From Antechinus flavipes (Eukaryota), in NCBI RefSeq assembly GCF_016432865.1, contig NC_067401.1, forward strand, positions 868,001 to 932,000: a stretch of 64,000 nt of DNA. The letters run 5' to 3'. This document shows positions 539-54,791 of the stretch, in pieces (position 1 is the stretch's first letter; every line of letters starts with the position of its first letter). The translations under genes were made by a program, and so were the position numbers. The notes beneath the pieces are model-generated. The model was not told where the DNA came from. It did not search any database and saw only the letters and a program-made list of their open reading frames with translations.

Positions 539-679
539 CTGCCAACATGCTCACTACTGAGAGCAGGATCTTCTCCACGCTCTGCACTGGGCTCCAGCGC
601 TCAGCACTGCTCTCGTAACCCATGGGGTCGTCTCCGGGGGCGTGCAGGATGGAGATGCAGACCCGCCCATCCGGGTAAA
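539..679 (-). CDS. UBE2G2: UBE2G2 coding exon 5 (141 nt; contains catalytic Cys89, codon at 659-657)
   Basis: TTTACAG|TTTAC acceptor, GCAG|GTGAGT donor; (I)[46 protein letters not shown]. Confidence 0.97.
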
Positions 680-3600
680 CTGTAAAGGGACCCAAACAGG
701 GGGGCCTTGACCCAAGCTGCAGTCAGAGCACGAGCGCCCGCGGGCAGAAACCGGCTGCTGTTTGCACAGCTGTGGCTGAGCATCCCAGTCACTCCCCGGT
801 GAGGCAGCTGCTGGGACTGGCACTGGCCCAGGCCCAGGGGCCCAGGGTCCCAGCGGGATCATCGCATAAAAAGGGAGTTGACTCGTGGGAGGAACCAGAG
901 CCAGAAAGGATGACATCCACAGAGCCCAGAGCCCCTCAGGACCCTCCCCTGGCCAATTCTACATGGGCCCATCTTGGCCAGAGTGGCTCGGCCCCATCCA
1001 CCTCCTGGGATCACCGGGGGTCACCACACCCAGGATGACCCCCGGAGAAGGGGGACAAAGGACAGGCAGACTGGAAAAATCTGAAAGCAGCTCAGACTGG
1101 GCTTCCTCTGAAATCCACTTGGGGCCCCAGAATGCCTCCCACTGCACTTATGCTGCCCCCAGCAGCCCCGGTCCTGAAAAGGCTGTGTGGGGGTGGCAGT
1201 GGGGAGAAGGGAGAAGGGGACCTGGAAGTCCTGGATTTAAAATCACCCTCTTCCTTAGGCCCCTCTTCTGTAAAATGGAACCCTGTAAGAAAATCGGTTA
1301 TGACATCACCCATTCCTGTAGCTTGAGCCTGAAGAGCATCGGCAACTCTGGGGGATCCCTCCCCACTTACAGCCATTTTGAAAATTTCAAAATAAACGAT
1401 AGCATCATATGTTTTTGTGACAATCGATGCTATTTTCTAGGACAAAAACGAACGAGAAGAGCAGCACGTGTTTCTTCTCCAGTTTTGCCCCTTCCACGTC
1501 TAGTACGGGGGATGCTTGTGTGGCGGGGTCTGCGTTCGATCCCTGCCCTATCACTTTCTGATTGAAGCGGAGAAGAAAAGGTGGGCGAGGGAGCAGCATT
1601 TGCACTGTCAGGTCACCCTCACAGCAGAGTGCAGACCTGGGGCCCAAGGGCCAGAGGCCCCGGCAGGGCCTGTCAAGGGCTGCACCAGGACCAGGCCCTC
1701 TCTCCCATCTCCATGGGGCAGGGGAAGCCCCAAGGCATCACAGTCACAGTTGTCAGAGGAAGGACCGCTATTGAAGGGAGTGCCCACGAGCTCACCAAAG
1801 AATCCACAGGAACCCTGGGACAATGATCGATGGCTCTGAACAAAGAGTCTTCGGGGGAGGGGAGCATTAGGAAAGAAGGCCTGTTTTTGACATGAGGAGA
1901 CCCAGAGCTAAGACGATGACTGTCACTGGAGAAGCCGGTCCTTCAGGCCATGCAGAAGCGGGGCAGGGCAGTTGCTAGCATGCCTTTATGAGGGGAGGGA
2001 GCACGGGGCCGCCCCGCCACTCGCATCGGCGGGGTCCGCTGCCGGCCCAGATCTCTCAGAAGCAGGTTTGGGAGGGCTCCGAGAAAAGAGGTGCAGAATT
2101 TGGGACACTAAAAGCCCCAAAGTCAGCCCGGAGAGACTGGAGAAACTGCTCAGAGCTGAGCACGCNNNNNNNNNNNNNNNNNNNNNNNNNNNNNNNNNNN
2201 NNNNNNNNNNNNNNNNNNNNNNNNNNNNNNNNNNNNNNNNNNNNNNNNNNNNNNNNNNNNNNNNNNNNNNNNNNNNNNNNNNNNNNNNNNNNNNNNNNCT
2301 CTCACAGATATTCTCTGTGCCTCCACAAGGAGGAGCCAGGGGACTCTCCCACGTTCTGACATCCGGCCCCCTGAGGACGGGCTCCGTACCATGAGGAGTT
2401 ACGGTCAATGACAGTATTCTTCTAGAAAGCCTCACTGTAACGGAGGCAGTTCTACACAAAAACAGGCGCCCTAAGGCCCCACTGGCGGAGTTGGGAGCCG
2501 GGCCCATCGTCCAGCCCGGTGGCGCCGCTGGCACGACCCATATCCCAGAGAGCAAAGGAAGCGGCGTCCGGCTGCGGCAGAACATGGTTTTGCCGTAAAA
2601 AATGCCGAGCAGGACAAAGCCGGGAACATGGCCCGCAAGAGGGCAGCAAGGGGAGACGGCCTGGCGCAAATTTACCCTAGCCCGACTCTAACCCCCAGGG
2701 CCTCCAGATGAAAAGGCTGGCCAGCCCCAGGGGAGTGGGCAGGGACCAAAGTGTCTTCTTCCTCTTCCTTTGTTTCCCAGTTTTCGCTACTTGGCCAACA
2801 AGGCAGTGTGTCTGGCAGAATTGAGATTCAATTGTCTTTTCAATGGGTAAGGGGCTAGAGAGAGAGCCTGGGACTGGCTCTGAACACTAAAATTACATCA
2901 CGAGGTGTTTTGGGGGGAGGCGGCTGCTGCCCCCCATTTCTGGTTAGCGAGACTCAGTATCGCCTCAGTTTCCACAGAACAGCAGGAATCCAAGCCCTGT
3001 TTCGAGGCTCCTATCTGGCGCGGGGAGCCCCAAAGGTGCCAGTCCCACCCTGCCCCCAGCCTCCTGCCTGGTCACTTACTGTTTGGGTGGAACATCTCAC
3101 AGGTGAACCTCATCTTCGGGGGGCTGAGTGGGTAGTCCAGGGGAAAGCTCAGGATCGCAGGGAAAACGCCAAACTCAAAACAGGTATCTTCTGGGCCCCT
3201 GCAGAAGAGATTCAAATGAGCCCTGTGGGCCCGACGCCTGGGGCCCCTCCCCCTGCACTCACTGGGACACATCCCCGAGGCAGGGAGCACCCTGTGGAGA
3301 AGCAGCTCCTGGAGAACAGGTGGGGAAAGTGGGCGGCGCAGAGCTCCTCCTCCCTTCGGCCCTATGTGGCCGGCTGTCCGGCCCGGGGTCTGGGCCAGTG
3401 CCCCATGTCCACTGCCATGCCCCTCCCCCCCAAACCAGACCAGGCGTGGGCAAGCTCCCTCCTACCAGGGTGTGCCCCACTCAGCCACTAGGACCACCCA
3501 CTGAGGAGCTCCTCACAGCCTCCCGGGTACGAGACAAACATCAAGGGCTGGCTGGGGTCCGGCCCCAGAAACTTCCTTCTCCCCTCCTCCTGTGCCTGAG

Positions 3601-9600: not shown

Positions 9601-12600
9601 TCTCCCAGGGTGCCATCAATTCCCGTGACTCAGCACCTTGTAAGAACCCTAACCCCCGACCACAGCAAGCGGCCGGGAATGGAGGTAACAGCTCCATCTT
9701 CTCTGGGCCATGTGTATGACGGAGATCCAAATAAAAGAACTGAGAGGGAATGGGGGCTGGGAGAAGGGAGGGCGCGTCACAGGAATGAGACTTGAGGGGG
9801 CGAGCAAGGCAAGGGCGGAGGGGCCTGAGGGTGGGAGTTGGTCACTGGGAGGAGGGTGCAGGGTGGAAGACAGCCTGGGACCTGGTGATGGGGGACAGAA
9901 GCTGGGGAGGCTGGATCTCTGGCTGCAGGCAGGGCCCCTCTGCCCAGGGATGGTAACCGAGCCCCAGGAGCTGAGGGGCAGGAACGGGGGGGCCTGGGGC
10001 AGGGGGGGCAGGGGAAAGGGAGAGGGAGAGAGAAAAGGCGGGGAGAGAAGGCACTCTCTTGTCTTTAGCTCTCTCGCTGTCTCTATCCTCTCTCATTTCT
10101 CGCTTTCTCTGTTCTCTCTCCCTTTGCCTCTGCATCTCTCTATCTCTGTCTCCATTCCCCCCCACCCCCAACTTCACAAACCAATTACAAAGCTATGGAA
10201 AATAACGTTTCTCCAAAACCTCAGACTCCACAGAGCAGGGACCAGGATCCGACCTAAGCCTGTGACATCAGAGAAAAGCTTCCCGTGGCCAGTGCTTCCC
10301 TTGGAGACCTGTGGCCCCGGCCCGCCAGGCCCTTCTCCCTCCATCGGCTCCTCAAGTCTGCCCGCACTCACTTCTGCTGCTGCCCCCCTGCCGACCCCCC
10401 CGGCCTCGGGCCCCCCCAGCCACCTTCTCGCTGGGTGGCCGAGGTGCCGACGCTTCAGTGCTCGGCCTTCTGGAGGACGGCCTGACTCTGAGTGCTGACG
10501 GCTCGCATCTCCTTGCTGCCCAGGACTCCCTTACTGCCCGACTCACAACACTCCTGGGGAAACCGTCCCTGTGATCGCCCAGGGTCAGCAAGGCCAGCCT
10601 CCCCACCGAGCCAGAGCAGGGGGAGGCCGGGCGCACCAGCCGCGCCCTCCAAGCCCTTCTCGCCAACTCCCGGCCCCTCAGCCACCACCAGGCCCCGCTG
10701 CCCTCCATCCAGTCCCGTCTCCTTCCTGCCTCTTCTGAACTCCCCCCTCTGCCCCACACCCTTCTGTGGGCTGGAAGTGACTCCCAAAAATGCTCTTCTC
10801 AACGCAGACCCTCCTCGATCCTGAGCTTCCCCCCTTCTCTCCTCCCCAAGGTCTGGGGGCAGGGCTCTCTCGAGCCCCTTTTCTATGCCCAGGCCCAAGG
10901 AGCTGATCTTCCAAAACAGGAGACATGCACCCGCTTTATGCACGAAAACCACCAAATCCAAGTGGAACTAAAGGTGTCGAACACAAGGGAGTTTGGCACC
11001 CGAAGGGGCGGGGCGGGGAGGAGGGGGCAGCCTTGCCCACTGGGGAAGGGAAAGGCAGAGCTCGAGGCTCCAGGGACGGACGGCTCTGCAGAGGCTTCCA
11101 GCTCGGGTGCCCTGCAGCCTCTGCCCAAGTTCCCTGGGTTTCCTTCTCCTCTCTGAGTCTTCAGGACCTGGTGCAGGGAGACAGACACTGCATCCTGTGG
11201 GAGAAGGATGGTCCCCGCAGACAGCCCCAAGCCTAGGGTGCTCCTCAACAACCGTCTGCGGCAACTCTGGCAGGATGGACCCCGGGAGGTCCAGAATGGG
11301 CCTTCCCTCCGAAACCCAGGCTGTCAGCAACGCCCTCATCTTCAGCCGTCAGCAGGTGGCTCATTACCCGACCCGGCTGCAGCCTCCAGTGCTGCTGACC
11401 CCCCTAGCCCCCTTTAAAAGCCCTCCTGGTGGGCAGAATCGCGTAAGGCCCCAAGAGCTTCCAGACACAAAGTCTCACGGAGTTTGGGGCATTTCAGGAA
11501 GTCGGAGCAGGCCGGGCCGCTCCCTTGGCCCATCCTCCGGCCCCGCCAGCAAGCAGTCCAAAGGAGCCAGGCTGGCCCGGGGGGGCTCCTGCCATTGTCC
11601 CGTGACAGGCCTGAGTGAGGAGGGGACCCGGCTGCTCCTGCGAGACTCCAGAGGGCTCAGAACCCGGGGACACAGAGGCACCAGGTGCAGACAGGCTCGC
11701 TGAGAGGGAGGCTGAAGCTACAGGGGGATCTGGAAAAGTGTATGGGGGGGAACCCTTGAGGCTGTCTTGGCAAGGAGAAGGGGGGATGGTGAGGAAGAGG
11801 AGGACCCAGATCCAAGAGGCAGATGGTGAAGATCATGGGGGGGAATCAGGGCCAGAGACACAGCATGAAATGGAGGAAGATGGGGTGGGAGGCAGAAGCT
11901 CAGCCTGATGTCGTCCCTCTGGGGTCGCACGGGAGCCCAGGGCTCAGACCCTTTAAGGAGCCGGGGCTTGCCTTTCCCGGACTCACTCCCCCCCCCCCCT
12001 CCACCCCGGCCGGGCCCCTAACAAGGAAGTCGGAGGCCCCAGGTTAACTCACATGATCAAGGCTTCCCACTCAAAAAAGTTCTCTTCATTCATGGGCCCT
12101 GCAAGAGAAGGAGGGAGACCCCGCTTAGGGCTTCTTAGGGCCGCTCTGAGGTGGGGCAACCACGGGCAAGGAGAGGGTCTCAGGGTTCTTACCTGCCACG
12201 ATGCCCTCCGGGGGATTCAGCGTCAGTTCTACAAAAAGAACAAGAAAAACAGGGTCACTCCCTGCGGGGGCCGCCCAGGCAGCAGCACCTCCGGGGGATC
12301 CAGACCCCTCCCAAGAGGGCTTCCAGGGGTTGGGGTGGTGCCATCTGAGGCCTACCAACCTCCCCGGGCAACTTCGGGCCTTTCAAACACGCAGTGCCTG
12401 GGACTGCGGCATCAAACCCCCAGTCCCAAAGACCAGAGTGTCCCGCTCCCAGCCCCCTCCCCTTTACGCTCTGCCTCTCCCTCTCAAACATGGAAGCCCC
12501 TGTTGTTTCTTCCAAGTATTTGGAATCTTGGTGCTCAGTTAGTGCACAGCCTGGCACACAGAGGGCGTCTGATAAATGCTCTCCCCACTAGACAGATGGT

Positions 12601-18743: not shown

Positions 18744-18806
18744 CTACCACGCTCCCCCCGTCTGCTGCTGGAACACGTCAATCGTGTCTTCGTCCTCCAT
18801 CTCCAG
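18744..18806 (-). CDS. SUMO3: SUMO3 coding exon 4 (diglycine motif, tail AW, TAG)
   Basis: GAGCAG|CTGGAG acceptor; [20 protein letters not shown]. Confidence 0.96.
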
Positions 18807-21800
18807 CTGCTCGGGCACAAAAGAAAGGCGGCTCAGCGGCCGGGCTCCCCCCCCCCCCCCCGCCCGCCGGGCAGGGGGCCTAGGGATGGGCCCCAGCAGA
18901 CAAAAGGCAGGAGATGGCGAGGGGCAAGCCCAGGCAGAGGGAGGCTTCCTGACTGACAGGGGGCCCCTCCCGGGGCCAGCCCAAGGGGCAGAAGCCCATG
19001 GTGGGCAAGGGGCCGGGCTCCTACCTGTGCAGGGGTGTCCGTCTCATTGATTGGTTGTCCATCAAATCGGAACCGAATCTGTCTCATTGACAAGCCCTGA
19101 AATGTAAACCGCCGCCGTGAGGACAGGCTGAGGGGGCCGCCCAGGACCGGGCAGCCCAGACAGACCCTCCTGCCCAGGGTGACGAGGCGGCCTCTCGCTG
19201 GCGCTCCTTTCCCCGGGCCGGACGCCCCCATCGCCAGCCTGACATCCCCCCCAGACCCAACCTTCTTCGGCAAGCTCGGCCCAGGCCGCCCTCCTTGGAG
19301 GATCCCCATCTGCCAGGGAGGGGCCCTGTGCCCTTGGCCGTGACCTTTCTCCAGAAGGGATGTCCAGGTCACCATGGTGGGGAGCCAAGGCCAGCCATCT
19401 CCTGCCTCTCGCAACCCCTTCCCTGGGGCCCCTCGGGCCCATCTCTGTTCATGACAAGGGGGCAGCCCCCAGGAGGGCCCCGGGCCCTTGCAGGGAAAGC
19501 GGCTTTCCCCTACACTGCTTCTGCCTGGGGCAGGGGGCGGGGTCACAGCCCAGCAGGAATCTGGCTCACGACTCAACTCCTTTTTTCCTGAAAACCCAGA
19601 TGGGAATTTTTTGGCAAAACTCTACTCTGAGTGCCTGTGGAGCGAGGGGCAAACCGGGACTTCCTGGAAACGCTTTTGGCTCTGGAAAGGAAGGGGCTGA
19701 GCAGCCAGGCTGGCTTCCCCTCTAATGGAAACCAGATCCTCCCGGGGGAGGTCGGGCCGCCCTCCGCAGCCCCTTCCCCCCTCCCTCTCTCCTGCAGGGT
19801 CCCGCTCCGTCCTAGGGCCGGGCCCGGGGCCTCGTGGCCCCCGAGCCGCGGGACGCTCTTGGGGAAGAAGCTCCCAGCGGTCTCCCTCCTGGCTGGCTGG
19901 GGGTGGGGAGGGCCCCTGGCCGGGCCCATGGCAGCGTGGGGCCGCCCCCGTACCTGTCTCTCACAATAGGCCTTCATTAATTTGTTCAGAGGAGTGTGCC
20001 GCTTAATTTTGAACTGGACCACTGACCCATCCTGCCCGGCTACCTTCAGGTTGATGTGATCGTTCTCAGTTTTCACACCTTCCTGTGGAGAGAAAGCGGA
20101 AAAGCACCGTCTCCAAGAATTCCTCCTGTGCGCCCGAGGGGGCCAGGACGCCCGCCTGCAAAGACTTCCAGAAGTCCGGGCCCCTCTCCCTCTCGTGCCC
20201 CCCCCCACCCCTCCTGAGCTTTCCCGTCTCCCCCATGACTTTGCCCTCCCCCGCCTTCGTCTGCAGGAAGCTTTTGCTGATCTCTCCCGGACCCGCCTGC
20301 TGGGACCCTCCTCCCCAAATTCAGGGGGCGCAGACTTATGGCCCGTCCGAGGTTCGGGCATTTTCCCAACATGGCCTCCCCAGATAGTTACAACCCCCCT
20401 GAGGCAGCTGGGCTGACAGAGGGGGAAACTGAGGCAGGCGGCCCTTCCGTGATCCGCTCCGAATCCTACAATTAGAGTCTGAACTTCAGACTTCCTGACC
20501 CTGGACTCCAGGGACACACGGAAGAGATGGGGGCAAATGCAGGGCAAACCTCAGGCTGCTCCGGGGGGGTGGGTTCTCCCTTCCCAGAGGCCCCCCAGGT
20601 CTTTCCAAGGGTCCCATGGGGAAAGGAAGCCCCCCCACACCCACAAAAAGGCAGGTGATGGAGCAGGGAGAGGCAGAAGCCCCGCCCCCAGCCTTCCCCC
20701 ATCCACTTTTGGCCTGAAGCCTGCTGGGAGTCCCTCGGCGAGCCGTCTCAGCAGCTGCCCACCAAATAAAGGCGAGGGGGAGGCCCCGGGTTCCACCAGG
20801 AGCACGTCCCCGACGGGGCCCAGGAGACAGCCCCAAGGCCGCCCCCCCGCTCCCGGGGGGCCAGGAGCCCGGCCGAGGGCAGAAGTGGAGACAAACTCGG
20901 GCTCTCTGGAAGCCAACCGAAGAAACCAGGCGGAGACGGCTCTGTGGCCCTCGCTGCCGAGGAGCAGAAGCCCCGGGAGAAGGGGCCGAGGACGGCCGCT
21001 CGGGGCGCGCGCCAACAGTGACCCATCTGCCCTTGGCACCCAGGCAGGAATCCAGGCCCGGCCGAGGGGCTTCCGGCCTTCAGGGTCTTCGTGGGCCCGG
21101 CCAGCACCAGGTCCTCAATGACGGCTTCCGGGCTCCCCCATTCTCCAACAGAAGATGCCCCCTGGCTCCCATGAGCCCCGCACCCCCGGCGGGTGCCGGG
21201 GTCGCAGCCTCTCCTTTCAGGGTCCAGAGGAAAAAATGATAAAGCGTCTACCAGGCACCAAGACAAAAGCGGCCGGCCTCTGCCCTCGGGGAGCCGGAGG
21301 AGGGGCCCCGGAAGCAGAGCTGAGGAGCCACCGAGCCGGCCCCCCAAAAGCAGAGGGGGACCCCGGGGGGCCGGACAGGGAGAGGACCGAGGCTAGTCTC
21401 CCAGTGAGGAGGCTCAGAAGCGGGGCTGGAGGGCACAGGAAGCACCCCTTTCCCCCAAAGCTCTCGGGGTGTCCCGGCAGCGCAAGGCGCGAGTCCTTCA
21501 AAAAAGAATGACCTCCCACTGGCTCCCGTTCCCAGGGGCCAAGGGACCCCAGGCCAACCCCTCTGGGGGCCCCCTACTAACAGTAACTCCGAGGATGCTC
21601 CTGGGGGGCAGCCCTGCCCTGGGGTCTCGGGAGCCACCGGAGTTGGGGAGCCGGGGCTCCCCGGAAAAGCTGCACAGACCAAGGCCTCGACCTCTCCCTC
21701 GATGGGGGCCCTGCCAACAAGCAACGGGCCACGGCAGCCCCGGGTCCCGGCCCTGCACCCCATCATCTGGCCTCGGGAAGCGGCCCTCGCGCCCAGGACA

Positions 21801-26695: not shown

Positions 26696-27459
26696 CTCCC
26701 TTCCTTCCTAACTTACATCCAGGCAGCCCCTTCCCCAGTGGCCTCCTCAGGGGCCTGGGTAGGCAGGACTCACTCCTGTGAGCAGCCCCAGAGGCCCCAT
26801 TTCACGGGGTATGAAGGAGGGCAACATCCCCCGCCTCTGAGTCTCTGGGCCTTCCTGGGCCTCGGTCCCTCTGGTCACTACCCTCCCCCTCAGCACAGGG
26901 GCTTGTTCTATGTCACTTGGCTCCTTGGGGAAGAGGGTCAGGGTCAGCTTGTTTTCCTTTTTCCCAAGATGGAGGCAGTGGGGAGGGGAGGGATGAGGGA
27001 GAGATTGCATCACCGGCGACCGTATCTCCCCCACGTGGTGAGGGGTCAGGGGCCGGGGGGGGGGGGGGATTCTCCTGGGAATTCTCCCTGGGACCCAAGG
27101 ACCCTTGCACCCCCTGCAGGCGCCCTCCGTGACCCTGACTCCGCGGCAATTACGTTTCCAAGGAAGGTGCTGCCAAATAAGCCAGAAGGCTCTAGGACCC
27201 TCAGCTCCCTGACCATCTCACCCTGATCTCCCCCCAAGCCGGCAACAGACTCCCCTTCAGGAAGAGTCTCCAAGGGAGCCGCCATCAGCAGGCCCCAAGG
27301 GAACCAGTCCAACGCCCTCAACAGTTAACAAGAAGAAAGTGCCCCCGCCTCCACAAGGAGGAGCCCCCCGAAGGAGCAGGGAAAGGGAGGGGAGGGGACT
27401 TGGGACCCTGAGGAAACTGAGGTGGGGGAGGCACCTCACACAGAGGGAAACTTCCTTTC

Positions 27460-28612
27460 TCTCTTCTACCTTTCTCCCTCCCCCTCCTTTGTCTCTCTTC
27501 CTCTCTTTCCCTCTCTTTTCTTCTCTCCTTTCTCTTTCCCTTCTCTTTTTCCCACTCCCCCTCCTTTCTCTTCTCTTTCCCTCTTTCCCTCCCTTTTCTC
27601 CTTTTTCCCTCTCTCTTCCTCTCCCCCTCCTCTCTCTTTTTCCCTCTCTCCCCCTCCTCTTTTTCCTTCCCCTCCCTCCTCTCTCTTTCCCTCTCCCCCT
27701 CCTCTCTTTCCCTCTCCCCCTCCTCTCTTTCCCTCTCTCCCCTCCCTCCTCCCTCTTTCCCTCTCCTTCTCTCTTCTTTTTCCCTCTTTCCCTCTTTTCC
27801 CTCCTTCTCTTTCTCTCTCTCCCCCTCCTCTTTTTCCTTCTCCCCCTCCTCTCCTCTCTTTCTCTTCTTTTTCTCCTTTTCCTCTCTCCATCCCCTCCCT
27901 CCTCTCTCTTTCCCTCTCCCCCGCCTCTCTCCTTTGTCTCTCTTCCTCTCTTTCCCTCTCTTTTCTTCTCCTTTCTCTTTCCCTTCTTGACTTCTCTTTT
28001 TCCTTCTCCCCCTCCTCTCCTCTCTTTCTCTTCTTTTTCTCCTTTCCCTCTCTCAATCCCCTCCCTCCTCTCTCTTTCTCTCTCCCCCTCCTTCTCTCTT
28101 TCCCTCTCCCCCTCCTCTTCTCTCTCTCCCTTTTCTCCCTTTCCCTCTCTCCATTCCCTCCCTTCACTCCTCTTTCCCTTTGTCCCTTCATTCTCTTTCC
28201 CTCTCCCCCTCCTCTTCTCTCCCTCCCTTTTCTCCCTTTCCCTCTCTCCATTCCCTCCCTTCACTCCTTTCCCTGTCACTTCATTCTCTTTCCCTCCTCT
28301 CTCTCTCTCTCCTTCTCTCTCTCCTCTTTCCCTCTCACCCTCCCCTCCCTCTTCTCTCTTTCCGTCTCCCCCTCCTCTCTCTTTTTCCCTCTCTCCCCTC
28401 CTCTTTTTCCTTCTCCCCCTCCTCTCCTCTCTCTCTCTCTTCTTTTTCTCCTTCTTTCCCTCTCCTTCCCCTCCCTCCTCTCTCTTTCCCTCTCCGCCTC
28501 CTCTCTTTCCCTCTCTCCCCTCCCTCCTCTCTCTTTCCCTCTCCTCTCTTCTTTTTCCCTCTTTCCCTCTCTTCTCTTTCTCTTTCCCTCTCCCCCTTTC
28601 CCAGTCCAGCCA
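27460..28612. repeat. CT-rich polypyrimidine array (~1.15 kb)
   Basis: Almost only C and T; recurring CTCTCCCCCTCCTCTCTTTCC units. Confidence 0.95.
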
Positions 28613-28639
28613 GGTGGGAAGCACAGATCAAAAAGCAAA

Positions 28640-29850
28640 GTCTTTTCGTTAAAACCGCACTAGGTGGACAACCAAGGGCCGCAAGAATTCCCCGAGATCC
28701 CCACAGCATAAAGCCCCACCCCCGTGGGGGCCGCTTTTCCCAACTCACTTGGAAGGTGGCGAGCATGGGCTGGGCCAGGGATCCCTGGGCTGGGAGGAGT
28801 GGCCGGCCATCTCCCGGTCTCCCTTCTCTCCAGAGCCCGGGACCCTGGGCCCCCCAGCCTCACGGCTCTGGCCATCGGCCCCGCGGAATGAGGGGTTCCT
28901 GCCAGCAGTGTCGGGGAGTCAGAAATTCAGGACAAGGAGCTGGAGCTTTGAGGGTGGGGACGCAAAGCTGGCCGGGACACAAGGCTGGCCAGGGGGCACT
29001 AGCCTGGGGGAGGGGGGGAAGGGGCGCTAGGCTGGCCTGGGCACGGCCGGGGGCGCAAAGCTGGCTGGGGGAGGGGCGCTAGGCTGGCCAGGGCGCAAGG
29101 CTCCTCGGGCTTCGGACAATGGAAACCTCATCGGGGAGGGGGCTCGGGTCAAGTGGAGCAGCTCAGTGGAGCCCCGGGCCCGAGAGGCGGGGCTTGTCCC
29201 CATAGGTGACGGGCAGATATCCCCCCTCCCTTCTTTCCCTTCCCCACCTCCCCCACCCCACCCCCGCCTGAACAATTGCCCTCGGGCTCCCCTTGCTTCC
29301 CCGAGCTGCTCCCGGTCCACTCCTGCCCCGGTGTTCCTGCAAGCCTCCCGGTGGTACAGCCGCCATCCTGCAGCCTGTTGCCATGGTCACGGGCTGGGAG
29401 CCGAGATTAAGGATGGCGCGATATGAGGGGGAGTAAACGCGTGCGTGTTGCCCCCCACCCCCCACCCTCGCCCGCACACACCCCGGCTGCTGCCACCCTG
29501 AGCTGGGCAGCGGCTGGCAGGCGGGGGAGGAGGGGTGAGGACTGGGGGGGGGGGGGGCTGGCCCAACTGGCAGAAGCGGGGGGGTGTCCAGGTGGGCCCT
29601 GCCTCCCCTCAGGGGAGCCCCTTCTTGGCAGGAGACCCGGGCAGGTGCTGCCCGCCGACAGGCGGCGGCTCCAGCAGAGCCTCCCCCAGCACAGCGCGCC
29701 CTGTGAGGGGCCGAGGGGGGCAAGATGGCTCCTTTCCCCTCGGCTGAAAATGGGCGAATCTCAGCAGGAGAGCGCTCTGTGTCGGGGCGCGAGGGGAGCT
29801 CCTGGGATCAGGGTCACCCAGCAGGCGTGAAACTAGACCCCACACGGACC
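28640..29850. promoter_or_regulatory. Orphan CpG-rich island with an RFX X-box
   Basis: Visible CpG enrichment; GTTGCCATGGTCAC at 29377-29390 is one mismatch from the X-box; YY1-like CCGCCATC (~29360) and GGATGGCG (~29411). Confidence 0.45.
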
Positions 29851-30764
29851 CTCTCTCTCCCTCCCCTCCCCTTCTTTTCCGCTCCCCCTCCTCTCTCCCT
29901 TCCTTCTCTCCTTCTTTCTCCCTCCTCTCTCCTCTGTCACTCTTCTTCTCTCTTCTTCTCTCTCTTTCCCTCTCCTCCATCTTTTCCCCTTCCTGTCTGG
30001 TTTTTTTCTTTGGCTCTCCCTTCTTCCTCCCCGCTCTGTTTCTCCTCTCTTTTCTTTCTTTCTTTCTCTTCCTCTATCGGTCCCTCCTCCCTCCCTCTCT
30101 GCCTCTCTCTCTTCCTTTCTCTTTTTTGTCTCTGTCTCTCTTCCTCCCTCGTTTTTGTCTCTGTCCCTCTTTCTCTTCCTCCCTCCTTTTGGTCTCTCTC
30201 TTCCTCCCTCCCTTTTTGTCTGTCTCTGCATGTCTGAATCTCTTCCTCCCTCCTTTTTGTCTGTCTCTTTTCCTCCCTCTTTGTTTCTGTTTCCCTTCCT
30301 CCATCCTTTTTGTCTCTCTCTCTTTCTCTCTCCTTTTTGTTTCTGTCTCCCTTCCTCCTTCCTTTTTGTCTCTGTCATTCTTTCCCTTTTCCCTTTTTGT
30401 CTCTGTCCCTCTTTCTCTTCCTCCCTCCCTTTTTGTCTCTCTCTGTGTCTCTCTCTTCCTCCCTCCTTTTTGTCTCTCTCTTCCTCCTTCCTTTTTGTGT
30501 ATCACTCTCTTCCTCCCTCCCTTTTTGTCTCTGTCTCTGCATGTCTGAATCTCTTCCTCCCTCCTTTTTGTCTCAGTCCCTCTTCCTCCCTCCTTTTTGT
30601 TTTTGTCTCCCTTCCTCCTTCCTTTTTGTCTCTCTCTCTCTTCCTTCCTCCCTTTTTGTCTCTCTCTTCCTTCTTTTTGTCTGTCTCTCTTTCTCCCTCC
30701 TTTTTGTCTCTGTCCCTCTTCCTCCCTCCTTTTTGTTTCTGTCTCCCTTCCTTCTTCCTTTTTG

Positions 30765-30822
<58 letters not shown>

Positions 30823-32530
30823 TTCCTCCCTTTTTGTCTCTCTCTTCCTCCCTTCTTTTTGTCTGTCTCTCTTCCTCCCTCCTTTTTGTCTCTGTCCCTC
30901 TTCCTCCCTCCTTTTTGTTTCGGTCTCCCTTCCTCCTTCCTTTTTGTCTCTCTCTCTTCCTTCCTCCCTTTTTGTCTCTGTCTCTCTCCCTCCTTTTTGT
31001 CTCTTTCTTCCTCCCTCCTTTTTGTCTGTCACTTTCTCTTCCTCACTTTCTTTTTGTCTCTCTGTATGTCTGAATCTCTTCCTCCCTCCTTTTTGTCTAT
31101 CTCTCTTCCTCCCTCCTTTTTGTCTGTGTCCCTCTTCCTCCTTTTTGTTTCTGTCTCCCTTCCTCCTTCCTTTTTGTCTCTCTTTCTCTTCCTTCCTCCC
31201 TTTTTGTCTCTGTCTCTCTCTTCCTCCCTCCTTTGTGTCTTTCTCTTCCTCCCTCCTTTTTGTCTGTCACTCTTTCTCTTCCTCCCTCCTTTTTGTTTCT
31301 GTCTCCCTCCTTCCTTCCTTTTTGTCTCTCTCTTCCTTCCTCCCTTTTTGTCTCTGTGTCTCTCTCTTTCTCCCTCATTTTTATCTCTCTTCCTCCCTCC
31401 TTTTTGTCTGTCACTCTTTCTCTTCCTCACTCTCTGTTTGTCTCTGTCTCTGTATGTCTGAATCTCTTCCTCCCTCCTTTTTGTCTGTCTCTCTTCCTCC
31501 CTCCCTTTTTGTCTCTCTCTTCTTCCTTTTTGTCCGTCTTGCTTCCCACCTCCTTTTTTGTCTCTGTCACTCTTTCTCTTCCTTCCTCCCTTTTTGTCTC
31601 TCTGTGTCTCTCTCTTCCTCCCTCCTTTTTGTCTCTCTCTTCCTCCTTCCTTTTTGTCTGTCACTCTTTCTCTTCCTCCCTCCCTTTTTGTCTCTGTCTC
31701 TGCATGTCTGAATCTCTTCCTTCCTCCTTTTTGTCTGTCTCTCTTCCTGCCTTTTTGTCTCTGTCCCTCTTCCTCCCTCCTTTTTGTTTCTGTCTCCCTC
31801 CTTCCTTTTTGTCTCTCTCTTCCTTCCTCCCTTTTTGTCTGTCTCTCTCTTCCTCCCTCCTTTTTGTGTGTCTCTCTTCCTCCCTCCTTTTTGTCTCAGT
31901 CCCTCTTCCTCCCTCCTTTTTGTTTCTGTCTCCCTTCCTCCTTCCTTTTTGTCTCTCTCTCTCTTCCTTCCTCCCTTTTTGTCTCTCTCTGTGTCTCTCT
32001 CTTCCTCCCTTCTTTTTGTCTGTCTCTTCCTGCCTCCTTTTTGTCTCTGTCCCTCTTCCTCCCTCCTTTTTGTTTCTGTCTCCCTTCCTCCTTCCTTTTT
32101 GTCTCTCTCTCTCTTCCTTCCTCCCTTTTTGTCCGTCTTTTTTCCCCTCCTTTTTGTGTCTCTCTTCCTCCCTCCTTTTTGTCTGTCCCTCTTCCTCCTT
32201 TTTGTTTCTGTCACTCTCCTCTTCCCTTTTTCTCTGCCTCTTTTCCTCCCTCCTTTTTTTTTTGTCTCTGTATGTCTGAATCTCTTCCTCCCTCTTTTTT
32301 GTCTGTCTCTCTTCCTCCTTTTTGTCTGTCACTCTTTCCTTTTTCCCCTTTTGTCTCTGTCCTTCTTCCTTTTTGTCTCTTTCACTCTCTCTTCTTCCCT
32401 CCCCTTTTCTCTGCCTCTCTTTCTCCCTCCTTTTTGTCTGTTTTTCTCTTCCTCCCTCCTTTTTGTCTGTCTCTTTCTCTCCTCCCCCTCCCTGTTCCTG
32501 CACGGTTTCTGTTTTTCCCTTTTTCTTTCG
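29850..32530. repeat. Complex CT/GT minisatellite array (~2.7 kb)
   Basis: Units such as CTTCCTCCCTCCTTTTTGTCTCTGTC; landmark ATGTCTGAATC recurs near 30231, 30541, 31066, 31454, 31705, 32272. Confidence 0.95.
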
Positions 32531-32717
32531 GTTATTCTCTCCTTCTCTAGCTCCATCTCTCCTCTGCTTGAGTGCTGGGCTGGGACATGTCTTCCCCCAA
32601 AGTTCTTCTCAGCAGGTTCTCCATCCACTCAGTCTGTACAATGCTCACACGTTAATGATCCGGACATACTAAAAGCAGACAAGTTCCAAAGGCCGGGGGT
32701 GGGGATTCGGTCCAAGA

Positions 32718-32897
32718 GTGACAGACAAAAAGAAGGGAGAGAGACACAGAGACAAAAAGGGAGGAAGGAAGAGAGAGACAAAAAGGAAGGAGGAAGGGAG
32801 ACAGAAACAAAAAGGAGGGAGGAAGAGGGACAGACAAAAAGAAGGGAGGAAGAGAGAGACAAAAAGGAAGGAGGAAAAGGGACAGAGACAAAAAGGA
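32718..32897. repeat. Inverted copy of the adjacent CT/GT minisatellite
   Basis: Reverse complement nearly identical to ~31910-32020 and other array units. Confidence 0.85.
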
Positions 32898-34146
32898 GAC
32901 CACTGGGAGAACAGTGGTCCAGGGTTTTCAGGCCGGGCGCTGGAAGCAATGAGACTTTACTGCCAGCGTTCTTAGACCTTTCCCAACAAGGAAAAGACGA
33001 AACTTCCTCTGCCTGGAGTGTTCTGATGGCCCTGGGCAAGGAAGGAGTTCAGCATCCGTGTTAGGAGAAAAAAGGAGCTGTCTCCTAGGTCCAACTGAGG
33101 CCCTGGGCCACAACCATTCTCTCCTAATCCTCTCCCTTAAATTCAAAGGTCCTCTAGACTCCAGGAGGAGGAGTGAAGGCTTGATCTAAGGGGAGATCGT
33201 GTCCCAGGGAGGTCTCAAGAGACGAAGGAACGAGGAAACCTTTCTTGTGCTCTGAGTTTAAAGTCCTGTGCTAAGCAGGGATTCACATTTTACGGGTACG
33301 GACGCCCCCAGAGCTGAGCTTCTGGAGGCCCTTCACACACGTCCACAGTAACACCACAGTGTTCAGGGAACGGGACCGTGGCTGGTGTCCGGGACTTGAG
33401 GGAGGAGGACTTTCTTCTCCTGCCTTCTGCAGCTGCTGGGGGCTGGGATGGAAACAGGGTTGGGGTCCTGTTTGGGTCTGAGGGAGACAGTACGAGAGGC
33501 TGGCCCACATAGGGGAGAGCTGGGGAAAGGGTGACTCTCCCCAGGAGGGGGGGGGGCCTGCAGAGGAATTCCACTTTTTGTAAAATCCCTGTCAGTGAGC
33601 AGCCAGGAAAAGGGAGGGGGGAGCAACATCCCGAGTTGTGGCTGGCACGGGGACCCTCAAAAGGTTTGCCGAGCCCTGGCCCATCTCACCTCCCGCGTCC
33701 TCTGACAACTCTGGGTGGGGGGCCCCCGTTCTGTACCTGAGCAGATGGAGCCCAGGGAGGGGCGGGCAAGTCTCATCACAAAATATCCATTCCGCGAGGC
33801 AGAGGCAAGATGGGGGGGGGGGGGAGGCCGGGGTTCCCCTGAGCTTCTCCAAAGCCCCCTCCACACCTTAAATAACATCTCAGAATGAATTCTGGACTGG
33901 CAGACCCAAGCAGAAGGCAGGATGAAACGCTATTCCAGCGCAGACCAGCAGAGGGGGCAGGCGGGAGAGGTCCATCTCACTGGGCCCAGAATGGAGGGCA
34001 GTTCGGGGTGGGCACAGCCAGCAGCCCGAGCGCTCAGCCCCCGGACAGTAAGACCAGCTGGGCAACTTCTGAAGCCACGGGGCCCGGGACCAGCCACGGG
34101 GCCTAGGACACACGACCCAGCACGGGTTCGGTTACAATCAACCTTT

Positions 34147-35531: not shown

Positions 35532-38500
35532 CTGGAAACGAGATGTTCAGAGCACAGCCCGGTGACCCAAGGGGCAGAGAAACAGCTTCCCAGCTCTCAG
35601 GGAGGGGGGGGGCCCAGACCCCCTCCGGCTCCAACCTGACTGGGGGACCCACCGCCCACGACAGGAAGCCCCCCCCCCTTCACAGGGCCTGAGCCCTTCC
35701 TGTTCCTCCCTATGGCCCCCAGAGACAGGGCTCCGGCCCTGGGGCCCAGCACCCCCTCCTAGGGAAGGGTGGGAGCAGTGGGAAAAGTCAGGACGTCGTG
35801 GGCCACCGGGTCGGAGGAGGTGCCCAGACAAGGCCGGGTCCTCGCCCTTGGTACCCCCAGGCCCAGACCAGCGGCTTCTCCCAAAGCTTCACACACGATG
35901 ACAGGGAAGAGGGTCTCCTGCCAGCTTCCCCCAGCTTGCGAAGGCCGCATCCTGCTCGCGGACGGGGGAGTGCGGGCAGGGCCGCGTGTGTCGGGCCCAG
36001 CGGGCCTCTGGGACACCTCCCGGACAAAGCGCCCTCCCCGCGGGGCACCGCCCATGTGGCTGAGGCCGCACGCAGACCAACAAAAGGCTCTCACCATATT
36101 TTTTCCTGATTTCTTCGTGTCTGGACTTCATCTCCGCTCTCCTGCAAGAAGGAAATCCGGTCACACACCGAGAGGACCCGACTGTCCCTTTCCGTTTGCA
36201 CGCCCCGGGAGCGGACGCTGGCACGCTGACCCCAAGGCTGGCTGCCCGGCGCCTCCTCTCACCCGGAGCCTCGAGACTCCTGAACTCCCAGGGGGAGACG
36301 CAGCGACCACAGCAGCCTCCTGGCCGCGAGCACGCGCCCTCACCATGGGCAGACCCCTGACGGCCTGCGCTCCCGCCCTCCCTGGCCGGCTCTTCCCCGA
36401 CGTCCCCCTCCTGCGTCCCACGTCCAGCTAGAGATTCCCCGGCAGCCGCCCAGGCCCCGAGGCAGCAGGCAGGCGTCTGCCCCTCCCCTCCTAGGCCTCT
36501 GTGGTCTCCATTCTCCCCAGCCCGGCCTCCGGGCACTGCCAGGCTGGACGCTGGCTCCACACGCCCGCGTCCTGGACTCCCTCCGAGGCTCATTCCTCAG
36601 CATCCCCGGCCAGTCTCACCGCCCCCCCCCCTTCCTTTTGCTGATCCCACACCCCAGACCCTCCTTGGCTCGGGCCGGCTGCCCTTCTAGCCTTGGGCTC
36701 CAGCATGGGCCGGCCCTCAGAACCAGCAAAGAGAACGGCGTGATTCAGATGCAGCACAAATGCAGCACAGAGGCTGAGGCTGGAGGCCCGAGTCAGCCCC
36801 CGGAAGCCCGAGTCAGCTCCCGGAGGCCCGAGTCAGCCCCCGGAGGCCCGAGCCACCCCCAAAGACCCAAGTCAGCCCCCAGAGGCCAGAGTCAGCCCCC
36901 GGAGGCCCGAGCCACCCCCAAAGACCCAAGTCAGCTCCCGGAGGCCCGAGTCAGCTCCCTGAGGCCCGAGTCAGCCCCCGGAGGCCCGAGTCAGCCCCCG
37001 GAGGCCCGAGCCACCCCCAAAGACCCAAGTCAGCCCCCAGAGGCCAGAGTCAGCCCCCGGAGGCCCGAGCCACCCCCAGAAGCCCGGCCTGAGCCGAGCC
37101 TGGAGATCCAAGTCGGGCCCTGGAGGCCCGAGCGGGCGGGGCGCCCTCACCTCTCCTCCTGCCGAACTCTTCTCTCTTCTCTCTCCCTGGCAGCGCGCTC
37201 CTCCTCTTTGTCGGACCTGCCAAGACCAAGAGTCACCGGTCAGTGGCCGCAGCTGCGGGCCCGGGCCCTGCCCCAGGCGCCCCCCGAGGCTCACCTGGGG
37301 TGTTTCTTTTTCCGGCAGCAGCAGCAGCAGCAGATGGTGATACCCAGGAGGAGGGCACCTCCCACCACCGACATGGCGATGATCAGGGCTTCGAAGTTCA
37401 CTGGGACACGAGGACGAGCAAAGTGAAGGTGGCCCCAGGCAGCAGGACCCCCCCCCCCGGGGTGCATACTGCAGCCTCCCGGCCGTGAGCGCCCCCTCTG
37501 CATGGGGGTCTAACCCCATCTGGCCTTTCCTACGGGAACGCTCCCCCCTCCTCACGGCAGGACCTCCCCCGCTCACCATTCCCTCTTGTTTCAGAGGACA
37601 AGGTCCCTGAGCACAAGGCCCGGCCCCTCACAGTCGGTCCCCGTGCGGAGCACTCCTAGTGCCCAGGAGCCAGGAGGACCCCCCCACACACACCACGAGG
37701 GCCCAAGGCCAGCCTTCGATGGGGACTGCGGCCCCGCGGGCAGCAGGAGGGAGGGAGCACTTACCCCAGCACACGCCCCATCGGGCAGAGCTCAGCTGGC
37801 AGAGCGAGCTGGGCGGCAGGATCTTCCGGACCGGATAGTCCAGGCAGGCGTTATTCGTATAGCACCAGAAGCACTGAAACGGGAGGGAATCAGAGCTGAG
37901 CGGCCCTCGGCCTCCCCTCACGGGGACGTGCCTGGGAACGGGGGACGGGGAGCACACGAGCAGGGGAGGAGGAGGAGGGAGCCAGGGGCACCGTCCTGTG
38001 GCTGGCGGGCCTGGCCCTGACTGGCCCCCTACTGAGGGGCGCTCCCCTCCCTCAGGAAAGCAGGAGCCTCTTCTCCCGGCAGATTCATGAGCCCAAAAGG
38101 CCTGAGGGCAGCGCTCAGCCAGGTGGCAACAACGGGAAGACTACCTCAGCCCTCCTAAGTCTCAGAGGCTCTGGTCTGGCCCCGGGGAGGTCTGGGGTAT
38201 CCCAGGAAAATCAGCACACTTGGCACAGACGCTCCAGGATGGGCCTAAACGTCGGGCCTCGGTCCAGCAAAACTGGCCTGCAGGACCAGCCCGGAGCACA
38301 ATTCTGCCCCGAGGGCCTGGAAGTGCCCGGGAGCACCACCCTCCTCCCAGAAAGAGCAGCCCCAGGGGTCCCCCCCATCCGGAACCAGACAGGCCCCTGT
38401 CACTCAAACGGGCTCCTTCTGTGTCTGCGTTCAGTCTCACCACCTGGAGTGAATGTCCTCAGGCCACAGGCTGGCCTTGGCACCGGGCCCTGCCCTGGAC

Positions 38501-41500
38501 CCTGCCAGGGGAGGTTCCTGCCAGAGCCAGAGCTTCCAAAGCTCCCCGGGTGCACAAAACCCTCTCTCCTAAGAGAAAACCCCAGCCTGGCTGACCCACC
38601 CGCCCACCCACCCACCAGCAAGCACTTTTCAAAGGCCTGCAGGCCATCGGGCTCCGGGAGGAGCCCCACAGGAGGAGCTGACCAGGAGCGGCCTGGGACG
38701 TGGGGGAGGGCCTGAGCACTTACCGAGACGTTCTTCAGGCACTCGCTGCAGGATTTGTTGGTGTTCTCAGAGCAAGCTGGGGGGAAACAGCCTCCATCAG
38801 ATGCAGAGGAAGAAGGGGCCCACATTTTAATGCCCCCAACTCCCCACAAGGACCTGCTGGCACCAGAAAAGCCTCAACCGGTTGCTCATAGAATCCTGAC
38901 GTTCAGGGCCCTCTGCTTTACAAAGGGGGAAACTGAGGCTCAGAAAGGGGCTGCCTCCAGCCTGGACTCTGCAACAAGCCTTGCATGAGTTTTCTCTTTC
39001 CCAACGGACACAATCTGCCATATTCCCCCTTCCCCTCACATCCCCATGGAGAAAAAAGAGAAATGAGACTCTAACAAAGGTACAAAACCAACATCCCGAC
39101 CTGCTGCAAAGCCTTGAGCCAGGACGAGCCAGGATATCCCCAGACATCCCCAGGATGAACCAGGACAAGGCGGGCCATCCCCAGGACGAGCCAGGACAAG
39201 GTCGGCCATCCCCAGGATGAGCCAGGACGAGCCAGGACATCCCCAGGATGAGCCAGGATATCCCCAGACATCCCCAGGATGAGCCAGGACAAGGCGGGCC
39301 ATCCCCAGGACGAGCCAGGACAAGGTCGGCCATCCCCAAGGTGAGCCAGGACGAGCCAGGCCATCCTCAGGACGAGCCAGGACGAGCCAGCACGAGCCAA
39401 AACATCCCCAGGATGAGCCAGGATATCCCCAGACATCCCCAGGACGAGCCAGGACAAGCCAGGACGAGCCAGCACGAGCCAAAACATCCCCAGGATGAGC
39501 CAGGATATCCCCAGACATCCCCAGGACGAGCCAGGACAAGGTCAGCCATCCCCAAGGTGAGCCAGGACGAGCCAGGACATCCCCAGGATGAGCCAGGACA
39601 AGGCAGGCCATCCCCAGGACGGGCCAGGACAAGGTTGGCATCCCCAGGACGAGCCAGAACATCCCCAGGATGAGCCAGGACAAGGCGGGCCATCCCCAGG
39701 ACGGGCCAGGACAAGGTTGGAATCCCCAGGACGAGCCAGGACGAGCCAGGACATCCCCAGGATGAGCCAGGATATCCCCAGACATCCCCAGGACGAGCCA
39801 GGACAAGGTCAGCCATCCCCAAGGTGAGCCAGGACAAGCCAGGACATCCCCAGGATGAGCCAGGATATCCCCAGATATCCCCAGGACGAGCCAGGACAAG
39901 GCGGGCCATTCCCCAGGACGAGCCAGGACATCCCCAGGATGAGCCAGGATATCCCCAGGACAAGCCAGGACAAGGTTGGCATCCCCAGGACGAGCCAGAA
40001 CATCCCCAGGATGAGCCAGGACAAGGCGGGCCATCCCCAGGACGGGCCAGGACAAGGTTGGAATCCCCAGGACGAGCCAGGACGAGCCAGGACATCCCCA
40101 GGATGAGCCAGGATATCCCCAGACATCCCCAGGACGAGCCAGGACAAGGTCAGCCATCCCCAAGGTGAGCCAGGACGAGCCAGGACGAGCCAGGACATCC
40201 CCAGGATGAGCCAGGATATCCCCAGATATCCCCAGGACGAGCCAGGACAAGGCGGGCCATTCCCCAGGACGAGCCAGGACATCCCCAGGATGAGCCAGGA
40301 TATCCCCAGGACAAGCCAGGACAAGGTTGGCATCCCCAGGACGAGCCAGGACATCCCCAGGATGAGCCAGGATATCCCCAGACATCCCCAGGACGAGCCA
40401 GGACAAGGTCAGCCATCCCCAAGGTGAGCCAGGACGAGCCAGGACATCCCCAGGATGAGCCAGGACAAGGCGGGCCATTCCCCAGGACGAGCCAGGACAT
40501 CCCCAGGATGAGCCAGGATATCCCCAGGACAAGCCAGGACAAGGTTGGCATCCCCAGGACGAGCCAGGACATCCCCAGGATGAGCCAGGATATCCCCAGA
40601 CATCCCCAGGACGAGCCAGGACAAGGTCAGCCATCCCCAAGGTGAGCCAGGACGAGCCAGGACATCCCCAGGATGAGCCAGGACAAGGCGGGCCATTCCC
40701 CAGGATGGGCCAGGACGAGGTTGGTATCCCCAGGACGAGCCAGGATATCCCCAGGATGAGCCAGGACAAGGCGGGCCATTCCCCAGGATGGGCCAGGACA
40801 AGGTTGGTATCCCCAGGACGAGCCAGGACGAGCCAGGACATCCCCAGGACGAGCCAGGATATCCCCAGATATCCCCAGGACGAGCCAGGACAAGGCGGGC
40901 CATTCCCCAGGACGAGCCAGGACGAGCCAGGATGAGCCAGGACAAGGCAGGCCATCCCCAGGACGGGCCAGGACAAGGTTGGCATCCCCAGGACGAGCCA
41001 GGACATCCCCAGGATGAGCCAGGACAAGGCAGGCCATCCCCAGGACGGGCCAGGACAAGGTTGGTATCCCCAGGACAAGCCAGGACTCTGCCTGAGAACT
41101 CTGGGCGGCCCCTGCCCTGCCCAAGCTAGGCCTTCCAAGGCTCTGGGCCTAAGGTCACCAGGCTTCCCCAGGAAGCCAGAATGAGGAAGCGGTGTCCCTC
41201 CCTGCCCCTAGACGATGTGGGCCAGATCAGCCCAGGGCCCGGCTCACAGGCCACATTCCCCTCTGTTTACTGGGTTAGGAGCCCTAGTAGGTGAGGTCCT
41301 GGAGGGCAGCAACGGGCCCTTCCCAGGGCTCGATAAAGGCTCGGGCTGAACATGAGGCGAGTAACTCAGAGCCCCTTTATCAGGACCCAAGACCTCCCCC
41401 AAAGAAAGAAGCACGTGGGGGGGTGAGGGGAAACAGGACCAGAAGCGCCTGTGGGAGGGGGGACCAGGACAAGAACTGCACAAGGAGGGGGGAAGGGAGA

Positions 41501-44831: not shown

Positions 44832-54791
<9,960 letters not shown>

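What the first reader, a model, noticed from the sequence alone, without database searches (positions are those of the whole stretch)
1365..1465. Hidden 66-nt poison exon in UBE2G2 intron 4
Seen: an AT-rich island in otherwise very GC-rich intron DNA has, on the UBE2G2 strand, a long pyrimidine tract and acceptor (CTCTTCTCGTTCGTTTTTGTCCTAG, AG at 1438-1437) and a consensus donor (GCT|GTAAGT at 1371/1370). Inclusion after exon 4 (phase 1) reads [13 protein letters not shown]. The stop falls before catalytic Cys89 and ~175 nt upstream of the exon 5/6 junction. Known: such exons trigger nonsense-mediated decay and tune gene dosage. Inference: splicing-coupled control of the ERAD E2 enzyme, with the AT richness suggesting the exon resisted local GC drift through selection.
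Basis: partly seen in the sequence, partly recalled or inferred. Interest (0 to 1): 0.75.

Follow-up and report, generated by a model that had tools for sequence, protein, structure and literature searches.

The report
Candidate unproductive exon in marsupial UBE2G2
A 66-base stretch inside a marsupial copy of the protein-quality-control gene UBE2G2 looks like a hidden exon that would stop the protein early; its upstream splice signal seems to be shared with opossum, but no RNA evidence could be obtained, so its use and any regulatory role remain unproven.

Summary
A long pyrimidine tract ends in AG at 1438-1437. The 66-nt body is 1436-1371. The donor is GCT|GTAAGT with GT at 1370-1369. After exon 4 the frame reads [13 protein letters not shown].

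The motifs alone are weak evidence. In shuffles of this intron, 20-33% contain an equal or better acceptor/donor pair. Any sequence with 27% GC is also likely to carry stop codons.

One comparison favours the acceptor. NCBI's opossum UBE2G2 isoform X2 continues after exon 4 with KNTHDS. When back-translated, that start matches window position 1436 better than any other of 2,340 intron positions. Only 3 of 10,248 AG sites in the whole window score as well. The similarity ends after about 19 nt.

The stretch does not align to intron 4 of elephant or three artiodactyls. No protein ending in the predicted peptide was seen among the cluster representatives the searches listed.

I could not reach DNA from any other marsupial.

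Best reading: an old marsupial alternative acceptor, which here probably gives low-level unproductive splicing. Regulated dosage control is untested. The selection argument from AT richness is not shown.

The parts
3080..3198 (-). UBE2G2 exon 4 (GPEDTCFEF...FHPN, ends in phase 1)
   Evidence: Sequence; translation (ORF 3072..3290); tblastn.
1437..1465 (-). Candidate 3' splice site: pyrimidine tract ctcttctcgttcgtttttgtcct followed by AG (1438-1437)
   Evidence: The weight-matrix score is 7.98 bits, in the top 18 of 5,207 AG sites on this strand and above the real exon 4 and exon 5 acceptors. No YTNAY branch-point motif occurs in the 70 nt upstream.
1371..1436 (-). Candidate 66-nt cassette exon, GC 0.27. 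The first ~19 nt (1436-1418) match the back-translated start of the opossum isoform X2 alternative exon.
   Evidence: The anchored alignment ranks 1436 first of 2,340 intron positions. The alignment is AAAATA-GCATCGATTGTC against ARAAYACNCA-YGAYWSNC. Only 3 of 10,248 AG sites in the window reach the same score.
1405..1407 (-). In-frame TGA, 11th codon after exon 4
   Evidence: ORF 1405..1647 ends ...[10 protein letters not shown] at this stop.
1362..1370 (-). Candidate 5' splice site GTAAGTGGG, preceded by exon-side GCT
   Evidence: The weight-matrix score is 2.49 bits (top 98 of 2,801 GT sites), weaker than the real exon 4 donor (4.36) and exon 5 donor (8.42).
539..679 (-). UBE2G2 exon 5 ([13 protein letters not shown]...SMLA, carries catalytic Cys89)
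1557..1585 (-). Second strong acceptor-like site (ccaccttttcttctccgcttcaatcAG|AAAGTG). Paired with the same donor it would give a 187-nt exon, which also carries a stop.
   Evidence: Listed as pair 1557..1371; sequence.
1240..1290 (-). Decayed MIR-type SINE core (ccattttacagaagaggggcctaagga...) in the intron just downstream of the candidate donor
   Evidence: Four copies of the MIR core motif occur elsewhere in the window. The resemblance is moderate and is my own reading.

Best explanation
The AG at 1438-1437 is most likely a genuine, old marsupial alternative 3' splice site in UBE2G2 intron 4, orthologous to the one NCBI annotates for opossum isoform X2. In this dasyurid, exon definition would pair it with the GTAAGT donor 66 nt downstream. 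The resulting mRNA would carry a TGA 11 codons after exon 4, 175 nt before the last exon junction, and would be degraded by nonsense-mediated decay (NMD).

I think this happens at a low, noise-like level (unproductive splicing) and is not a tuned dosage switch.

Shown: the motifs, the reading frame, the NMD geometry and the statistical match to the start of the opossum exon.

Inferred: that the opossum model rests on RNA evidence, that the acceptor is used in this species, that the donor at 1370 is its partner, and that inclusion is low.
For: - The motifs and reading frame are read directly from the sequence.
- The acceptor scores above the real exon 4 and exon 5 acceptors and sits in the top 0.35% of AG sites.
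- Opossum isoform X2 (P0204) continues after FHPN with KNTHDS, against KNSIDC here.
- The anchored back-translated alignment puts position 1436 first of 2,340 intron positions and first of 146 AG-preceded positions.
- Dropping the shared K and N, the remaining residues still rank 18th of 2,300.
- Across the whole window, only 3 of 10,248 AG sites reach the same score, and among 417 AT-rich AG sites only the candidate does.
- NMD-specific exons that lack deep orthologues are usually young, included at low levels and best explained by noisy splicing (PMC2697156).
Against:
- Shuffled introns contain an equal-or-better motif pair 20-33% of the time.
- The donor has a poor exon side (GCT), and no YTNAY branch-point motif lies within 70 nt of the acceptor.
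- Similarity to opossum stops after about 19 nt. The opossum exon stays open for 70 GC-rich codons, so it gives no support for the 66-nt cassette or its donor.
- The opossum comparison uses a back-translated protein, not DNA. I set it up after noticing the shared 'KN'.
- The word searches listed no product ending [14 protein letters not shown]. Such a short product could be hidden inside a 90% identity cluster.
- The wallaby isoform X2 uses a different alternative exon, which I could not map to the window.
Confidence: 0.45

Rival explanations
1. It is a pure pseudo-exon. A short AT-rich patch in a GC-rich intron produces a T-rich tract plus AG, a GTAAGT and stop codons by composition alone. 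The spliceosome ignores it in this species, and the match to opossum is either coincidence or a shared neutral remnant.
For: - 20-33% of shuffled introns carry an equal or better pair.
- The window holds 15 low-GC patches.
- The donor has a weak exon side and there is no branch-point consensus.
- Nothing aligns in eutherian intron 4.
- No protein product was seen.
- RNA folding of the region is unremarkable, with a z-score of -1.7.
Against: - The opossum exon start matches exactly at this AG, with an empirical frequency of about 3 in 10,248 AG sites.
- At the same score thresholds, several of the pairs found in the window are, or share a splice site with, real UBE2G2 or SUMO3 exons. The signal quality is therefore exon-like.
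Confidence: 0.35
2. It is a regulated poison exon. Inclusion would be controlled, for example by ER stress, to set the level of the endoplasmic-reticulum-associated degradation (ERAD) E2 enzyme through NMD, and the sequence would be kept by selection.
For: - The NMD geometry is correct.
- The acceptor is probably shared with opossum, a split of about 80 million years by my own estimate.
- Real exons in this window are also AT-richer than their flanks. An AT-rich island is therefore compatible with constraint.
- CpG observed/expected is 1.4 in 1365-1465 against 0.24-0.5 in the flanks.
Against: - Similarity to opossum ends inside the exon.
- There is no eutherian counterpart.
- No paper in the searched library holds both 'UBE2G2' and 'poison exon'.
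- The high CpG value rests on only 4 CpGs. A young sequence would explain it equally well.
- Non-conserved NMD exons are mostly noise (PMC2697156).
Confidence: 0.08
3. It is an alternative last exon, as the opossum X2 model may be. The acceptor would be used but the transcript would end inside intron 4. That would give a truncated, catalytically dead E2 fragment of about 90 residues, with no cassette exon and no NMD.
For: The opossum X2 protein is annotated as a 150-residue product with a 70-codon tail after the same junction. Several other mammals have NCBI isoforms that end in intron 4.
Against: There is no AATAAA or ATTAAA anywhere in intron 4 on the gene strand. A consensus donor lies only 66 nt downstream of the acceptor.
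Confidence: 0.07

Closest known systems
Monodelphis domestica UBE2G2 isoform X2 (XP_007486190.1; P0204)
   Same: It has the same upstream exon 4. The alternative exon begins with the same junction codon and the same first residues (K-N, then D at codon 5). The back-translated start matches window 1436-1418. The product lacks the catalytic Cys89 exon.
   Different: The opossum frame stays open for 70 GC-rich codons, with no early stop. There is no sign of a 66-nt cassette or of the GTAAGT donor. I compared only at protein level, because opossum DNA could not be fetched.
NMD-specific 'noisy splicing' exons (Zhang et al. 2009, PMC2697156)
   Same: It is a short intronic exon candidate with a premature stop, with no deep orthologue, in a housekeeping gene that has several annotated minor isoforms.
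   Different: Those exons are defined from observed transcripts, and here no transcript has been seen. The candidate is a multiple of three long, whereas that class tends not to be.
Conserved poison exons of splicing-factor genes (SR and hnRNP genes; from my own knowledge)
   Same: A cassette exon with an in-frame stop located so that it triggers NMD.
   Different: Those exons sit in ultraconserved elements and are autoregulated by the encoded RNA-binding protein. Here nothing aligns to eutherians, and UBE2G2 is not an RNA-binding protein.
Other annotated intron-4 alternative exons of UBE2G2 (wallaby X2 P0203, mandrill X1 P0210, hippopotamus X2/X4, Arvicanthis X3, and human entries that tools listed)
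   Same: They are alternative exons or read-through after exon 4 that replace or interrupt the catalytic half of the enzyme.
   Different: Their peptides are unrelated to this one. The wallaby tail could not be mapped to the window. I did not fetch or compare any human contigs.

Membership tests
Poison (NMD-coupled cassette) exon | Flanked by a usable 3' and 5' splice site | tested here: inconclusive
   Consensus motifs are present. The acceptor is strong, the donor is moderate, and there is no YTNAY branch-point motif. Usability cannot be shown from sequence alone.
Poison (NMD-coupled cassette) exon | Inclusion observed in spliced RNA | not testable with these tools
No matching protein product was listed, which is weak negative evidence only.
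Poison (NMD-coupled cassette) exon | Introduces a stop more than 50-55 nt upstream of the last exon-exon junction | tested here: met
   The TGA is at 1407-1405. It lies 34 nt from the exon end, and exon 5 adds 141 nt, giving 175 nt before the exon 5/6 junction. This assumes exon 6, which lies outside the window, is the last exon.
Poison (NMD-coupled cassette) exon | The isoform is stabilised when NMD is blocked | not testable with these tools
   This needs an experiment.
Conserved regulatory poison exon | Exon and splice sites conserved across distant species | tested here: not met
   There is no blastn hit at the candidate in intron 4 of Elephas or three artiodactyls. Against opossum only the first ~19 nt match, at protein-derived level. 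Other marsupial DNA could not be reached.
Pseudo-exon (unused splice-site pair) | Splice-site-like pair no better than chance and never spliced | tested here: inconclusive
   The chance level is 20-33% per shuffled intron, but the acceptor coincides with the start of an annotated opossum exon. Non-use could not be tested.

The most novel reading that the evidence does not exclude
A marsupial-wide alternative exon in UBE2G2 intron 4, roughly 80 million years old, switches off the ERAD E2 enzyme. It would do so either by NMD, as the 66-nt stop-carrying cassette in this dasyurid, or by producing a fragment without the catalytic cysteine, as in opossum. It would be regulated with ER load.
Probability: 0.08. 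Interest if true: 0.5.

Novelty: new member of a known kind. Interest (0 to 1): 0.25.

Why it matters
If the exon is used, it is one more case of unproductive splicing in a housekeeping ubiquitin-conjugating enzyme. It would add a marsupial example in which the acceptor is old but the exon body has diverged. That would interest people studying how cryptic exons are born and kept.

It would matter more only if inclusion proved to be regulated, because it would then be a post-transcriptional control point for ERAD capacity. As it stands it is a testable candidate, not a finding. One RT-PCR or one RNA-seq junction search would settle it.

Tried and rejected

2. Other explanations for the island. 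I found no tRNA, no Rfam family at E<=1, no second copy in the window and no unusually stable fold (z = -1.7). The small palindromes and an 11-nt flanking direct repeat are at chance level. I rejected snoRNA and miRNA readings.

3. Marsupial DNA.
- The exon-4 and exon-5 ORFs were searched exon by exon, by reference. They returned no close relatives of this species.
- The opossum and wallaby isoforms (P0204, P0203, P0334) are not on record as gene products.
- The canonical marsupial protein never received an id.
- The large representative search with the opossum tail returned only P0204 itself and one low-identity repetitive match.

5. Mapping the full opossum and wallaby tails onto the intron gave scores at the shuffle mean, both by tblastn and by back-translated local alignment. 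A tblastn hint at 1944-1846 (E = 0.1) was not pursued as significant.

6. Human entries appeared in protein lists (P0013, P0329, P0382, P0410, P0414). I did not fetch, save or compare any human contig.

7. The N run at 2175-2297 was left as it is.

Full report
**What is in the sequence.** On the minus strand the window carries UBE2G2. Exon 1 is near 17229-17185, exons 2 and 3 are near 12235-12052, exon 4 is 3198-3080 and exon 5 is 679-539. The last exon lies outside the window. Intron 4 is 3079-680 and contains an N run at 2175-2297, which I left untouched. Earlier notes of this scan call the genome a dasyurid marsupial. I did not verify that myself.

The motifs in the finding are exactly where stated:
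- Acceptor: ctcttctcgttcgtttttgtcctAG, with AG at 1438-1437.
- Body: 66 nt, 1436-1371.
- Donor: GCT|GTAAGT, with GT at 1370-1369.
- Reading after the phase-1 end of exon 4: [13 protein letters not shown], with the stop at 1407-1405.

The stop is 175 nt upstream of the exon 5/6 junction and upstream of Cys89. The geometry for nonsense-mediated decay (NMD) is therefore right.

**Is it more than chance?** I scored splice sites with a weight matrix built from human splice-site frequencies that I recalled from memory, so the values are approximate.
- The acceptor scores 7.98 bits. That is in the top 18 of 5,207 AG sites on that strand and higher than the real exon 4 (7.7) and exon 5 (4.9) acceptors.
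- The donor scores 2.49 bits, in the top 98 of 2,801 GT sites. The intron side GTAAGT is perfect, but the exon side GCT is poor. The real donors score 4.4 and 8.4.
- Ten minus-strand and three plus-strand pairs in the 64-kb window reach both thresholds. Several of the minus-strand pairs are, or share a splice site with, real UBE2G2 or SUMO3 exons.

Shuffling the intron gives at least one equal-or-better pair in 20% of whole-intron dinucleotide shuffles and in 33% of 100-nt block shuffles. The motif pair by itself is therefore not statistically remarkable. No YTNAY branch-point motif lies in the 70 nt upstream of the AG. A stop codon is expected in a 27% GC sequence: two of the three frames have one.

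**The AT-rich island.**
- At 25-nt resolution the AT-rich core is 1376-1450 (GC 0.16-0.36). It nearly coincides with the candidate exon, which has GC 0.27. The immediate flanks are at 0.48-0.64.
- The window has 15 patches with GC <= 0.42 in 150-nt windows, none of which overlaps a UBE2G2 or SUMO3 exon I located.
- Real exons here are also AT-richer than their introns. UBE2G2 exon 3 is 0.48 against 0.67, and SUMO3 exon 2 is 0.48 against 0.63-0.76.
- CpG observed/expected is 1.4 in 1365-1465 against 0.24-0.5 in the flanks. That rests on only four CpGs, and it fits either constraint or a young origin.
- I found no tRNA, no Rfam family, no second copy in the window and no unusually stable fold.
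- Two small perfect palindromes (1375-1393, and 1399-1406 with 1426-1433) are at the level expected in AT-rich sequence.
- A decayed MIR-type SINE core lies just downstream, at about 1290-1240.

As a weak substitute I searched the exon-4 ORF and the exon-5 ORF separately, by reference, and then the N-terminal 80 residues of a marmoset UBE2G2 fragment. None of the retrieved proteins continues FHPN with [10 protein letters not shown]. Short products can be hidden inside 90% identity clusters, so this is weak evidence.

**Comparative evidence.** Loci for three artiodactyls (L001-L003) and an Asian elephant (L004) were fetched. Exons 4 and 5 align at 83-90%. Sensitive blastn of the whole intron 4 finds nothing at the candidate. 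The exon is therefore not a deeply conserved mammalian element.

I could not reach marsupial DNA:
- The encoding index holds only the longest product of each gene.
- The opossum and wallaby isoforms are not on record.
- The canonical marsupial protein never appeared with an id.
- The representative search with the opossum tail returned only P0204 itself and one low-identity repetitive match.

**The opossum lead.** One search returned NCBI isoform X2 of Monodelphis domestica (P0204, XP_007486190.1). After FHPN it continues KNTHDSPASVPV, against [10 protein letters not shown] here.

I back-translated the start of that tail to IUPAC codes and aligned it, anchored at its first base, to every position of intron 4.
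- Position 1436 scores highest of 2,340 positions and highest of the 146 that follow an AG.
- The alignment is AAAATA-GCATCGATTGTC against ARAAYACNCA-YGAYWSNC.
- Without the shared K and N, the remaining eight residues still rank 18th of 2,300.
- Over the whole window, on both strands, only 3 of 10,248 AG-preceded positions reach the candidate's score. Among 417 AT-rich AG sites only the candidate does.

I designed this test after noticing the shared 'KN', and it uses a protein, not DNA. Even so, coincidence at this one site is unlikely, roughly 1 in 1,000 after allowing for the two marsupial isoforms tried.

The similarity ends after about 19 nt. The rest of the opossum tail and the whole wallaby X2 tail (P0203) map nowhere above the shuffle level.

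I conclude that the acceptor is probably orthologous to an annotated opossum alternative acceptor. The 66-nt body, its donor and its stop are not supported by that isoform.

**Interpretation.** I put 0.45 on an old marsupial alternative acceptor that in this species gives low-level unproductive splicing. The most economical product is the 66-nt cassette, cleared by NMD. This fits what is known of NMD-specific exons without deep orthologues (PMC2697156).

I put 0.35 on an unused pseudo-exon, 0.08 on a regulated poison exon as proposed, and 0.07 on an alternative last exon. There is no AATAAA or ATTAAA in the intron.

No paper in the searched library holds both 'UBE2G2' and 'poison exon'. UBE2G2 is only listed among E2 enzyme genes whose cassette exons respond to snRNA knock-down (PMC6771400).

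**Verdict.** It is unproven where it matters, namely inclusion, NMD coupling, regulation and selection. No human contig was fetched or compared.

Noticed in passing
window 18759-20088, minus strand: SUMO3 exons lie just upstream of UBE2G2 exon 1: 20088-19954, part of 19135-19022, and 18815-18759. The gene order matches the sheep locus L001, where a 104-residue SUMO gene sits inside the annotated UBE2G2 range.
   Followed up: partly
proteins P0205, P0206, P0411 (Myotis, Marmota) and P0015 (Logan transcript): NCBI and transcript-derived isoforms remove the catalytic cysteine in frame. One type uses an acceptor inside exon 5 (FHPN|SDDPMGYE, losing the residues around Cys89). The other skips exon 5 entirely (FHPN|KPNDESG). 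Catalytically dead UBE2G2 isoforms therefore recur across mammals.
   Followed up: no
window 539-679, 3080-3198, 12052-12114, 19954-20088: Real coding exons in this very GC-rich region are consistently AT-richer (0.48-0.62) than the 100 nt on either side (0.63-0.76). This is the opposite of the usual contrast between exons and introns.
   Followed up: partly
window 1557-1585, minus strand: A second strong acceptor-like site lies 121 nt upstream of the candidate acceptor. With the same donor it would give a 187-nt exon that also carries a stop.
   Followed up: no
window 1375-1449: Three perfect short inverted repeats are packed into the AT-rich core: ATTTTGAAA/TTTCAAAAT with a 1-nt spacer, ATAGCATC/GATGCTAT, and GTTTTTGT/ACAAAAAC. 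The fold is not significantly stable (z = -1.7).
   Followed up: partly
window 27450-32900, 36760-37100, 39080-41190, 45390-45650, 48360-48720: There are large CT-rich and GA-rich low-complexity arrays, including an inverted pair around 30.2-32.3 kb and 32.7-32.9 kb. There are also several minisatellites with periods of 17, 19-20 and 31 nt.
   Followed up: no
window 2175-2297: A run of 123 N lies inside UBE2G2 intron 4. I left it as it is. The wallaby X2 alternative exon could not be placed anywhere in the readable part of the intron.
   Followed up: no
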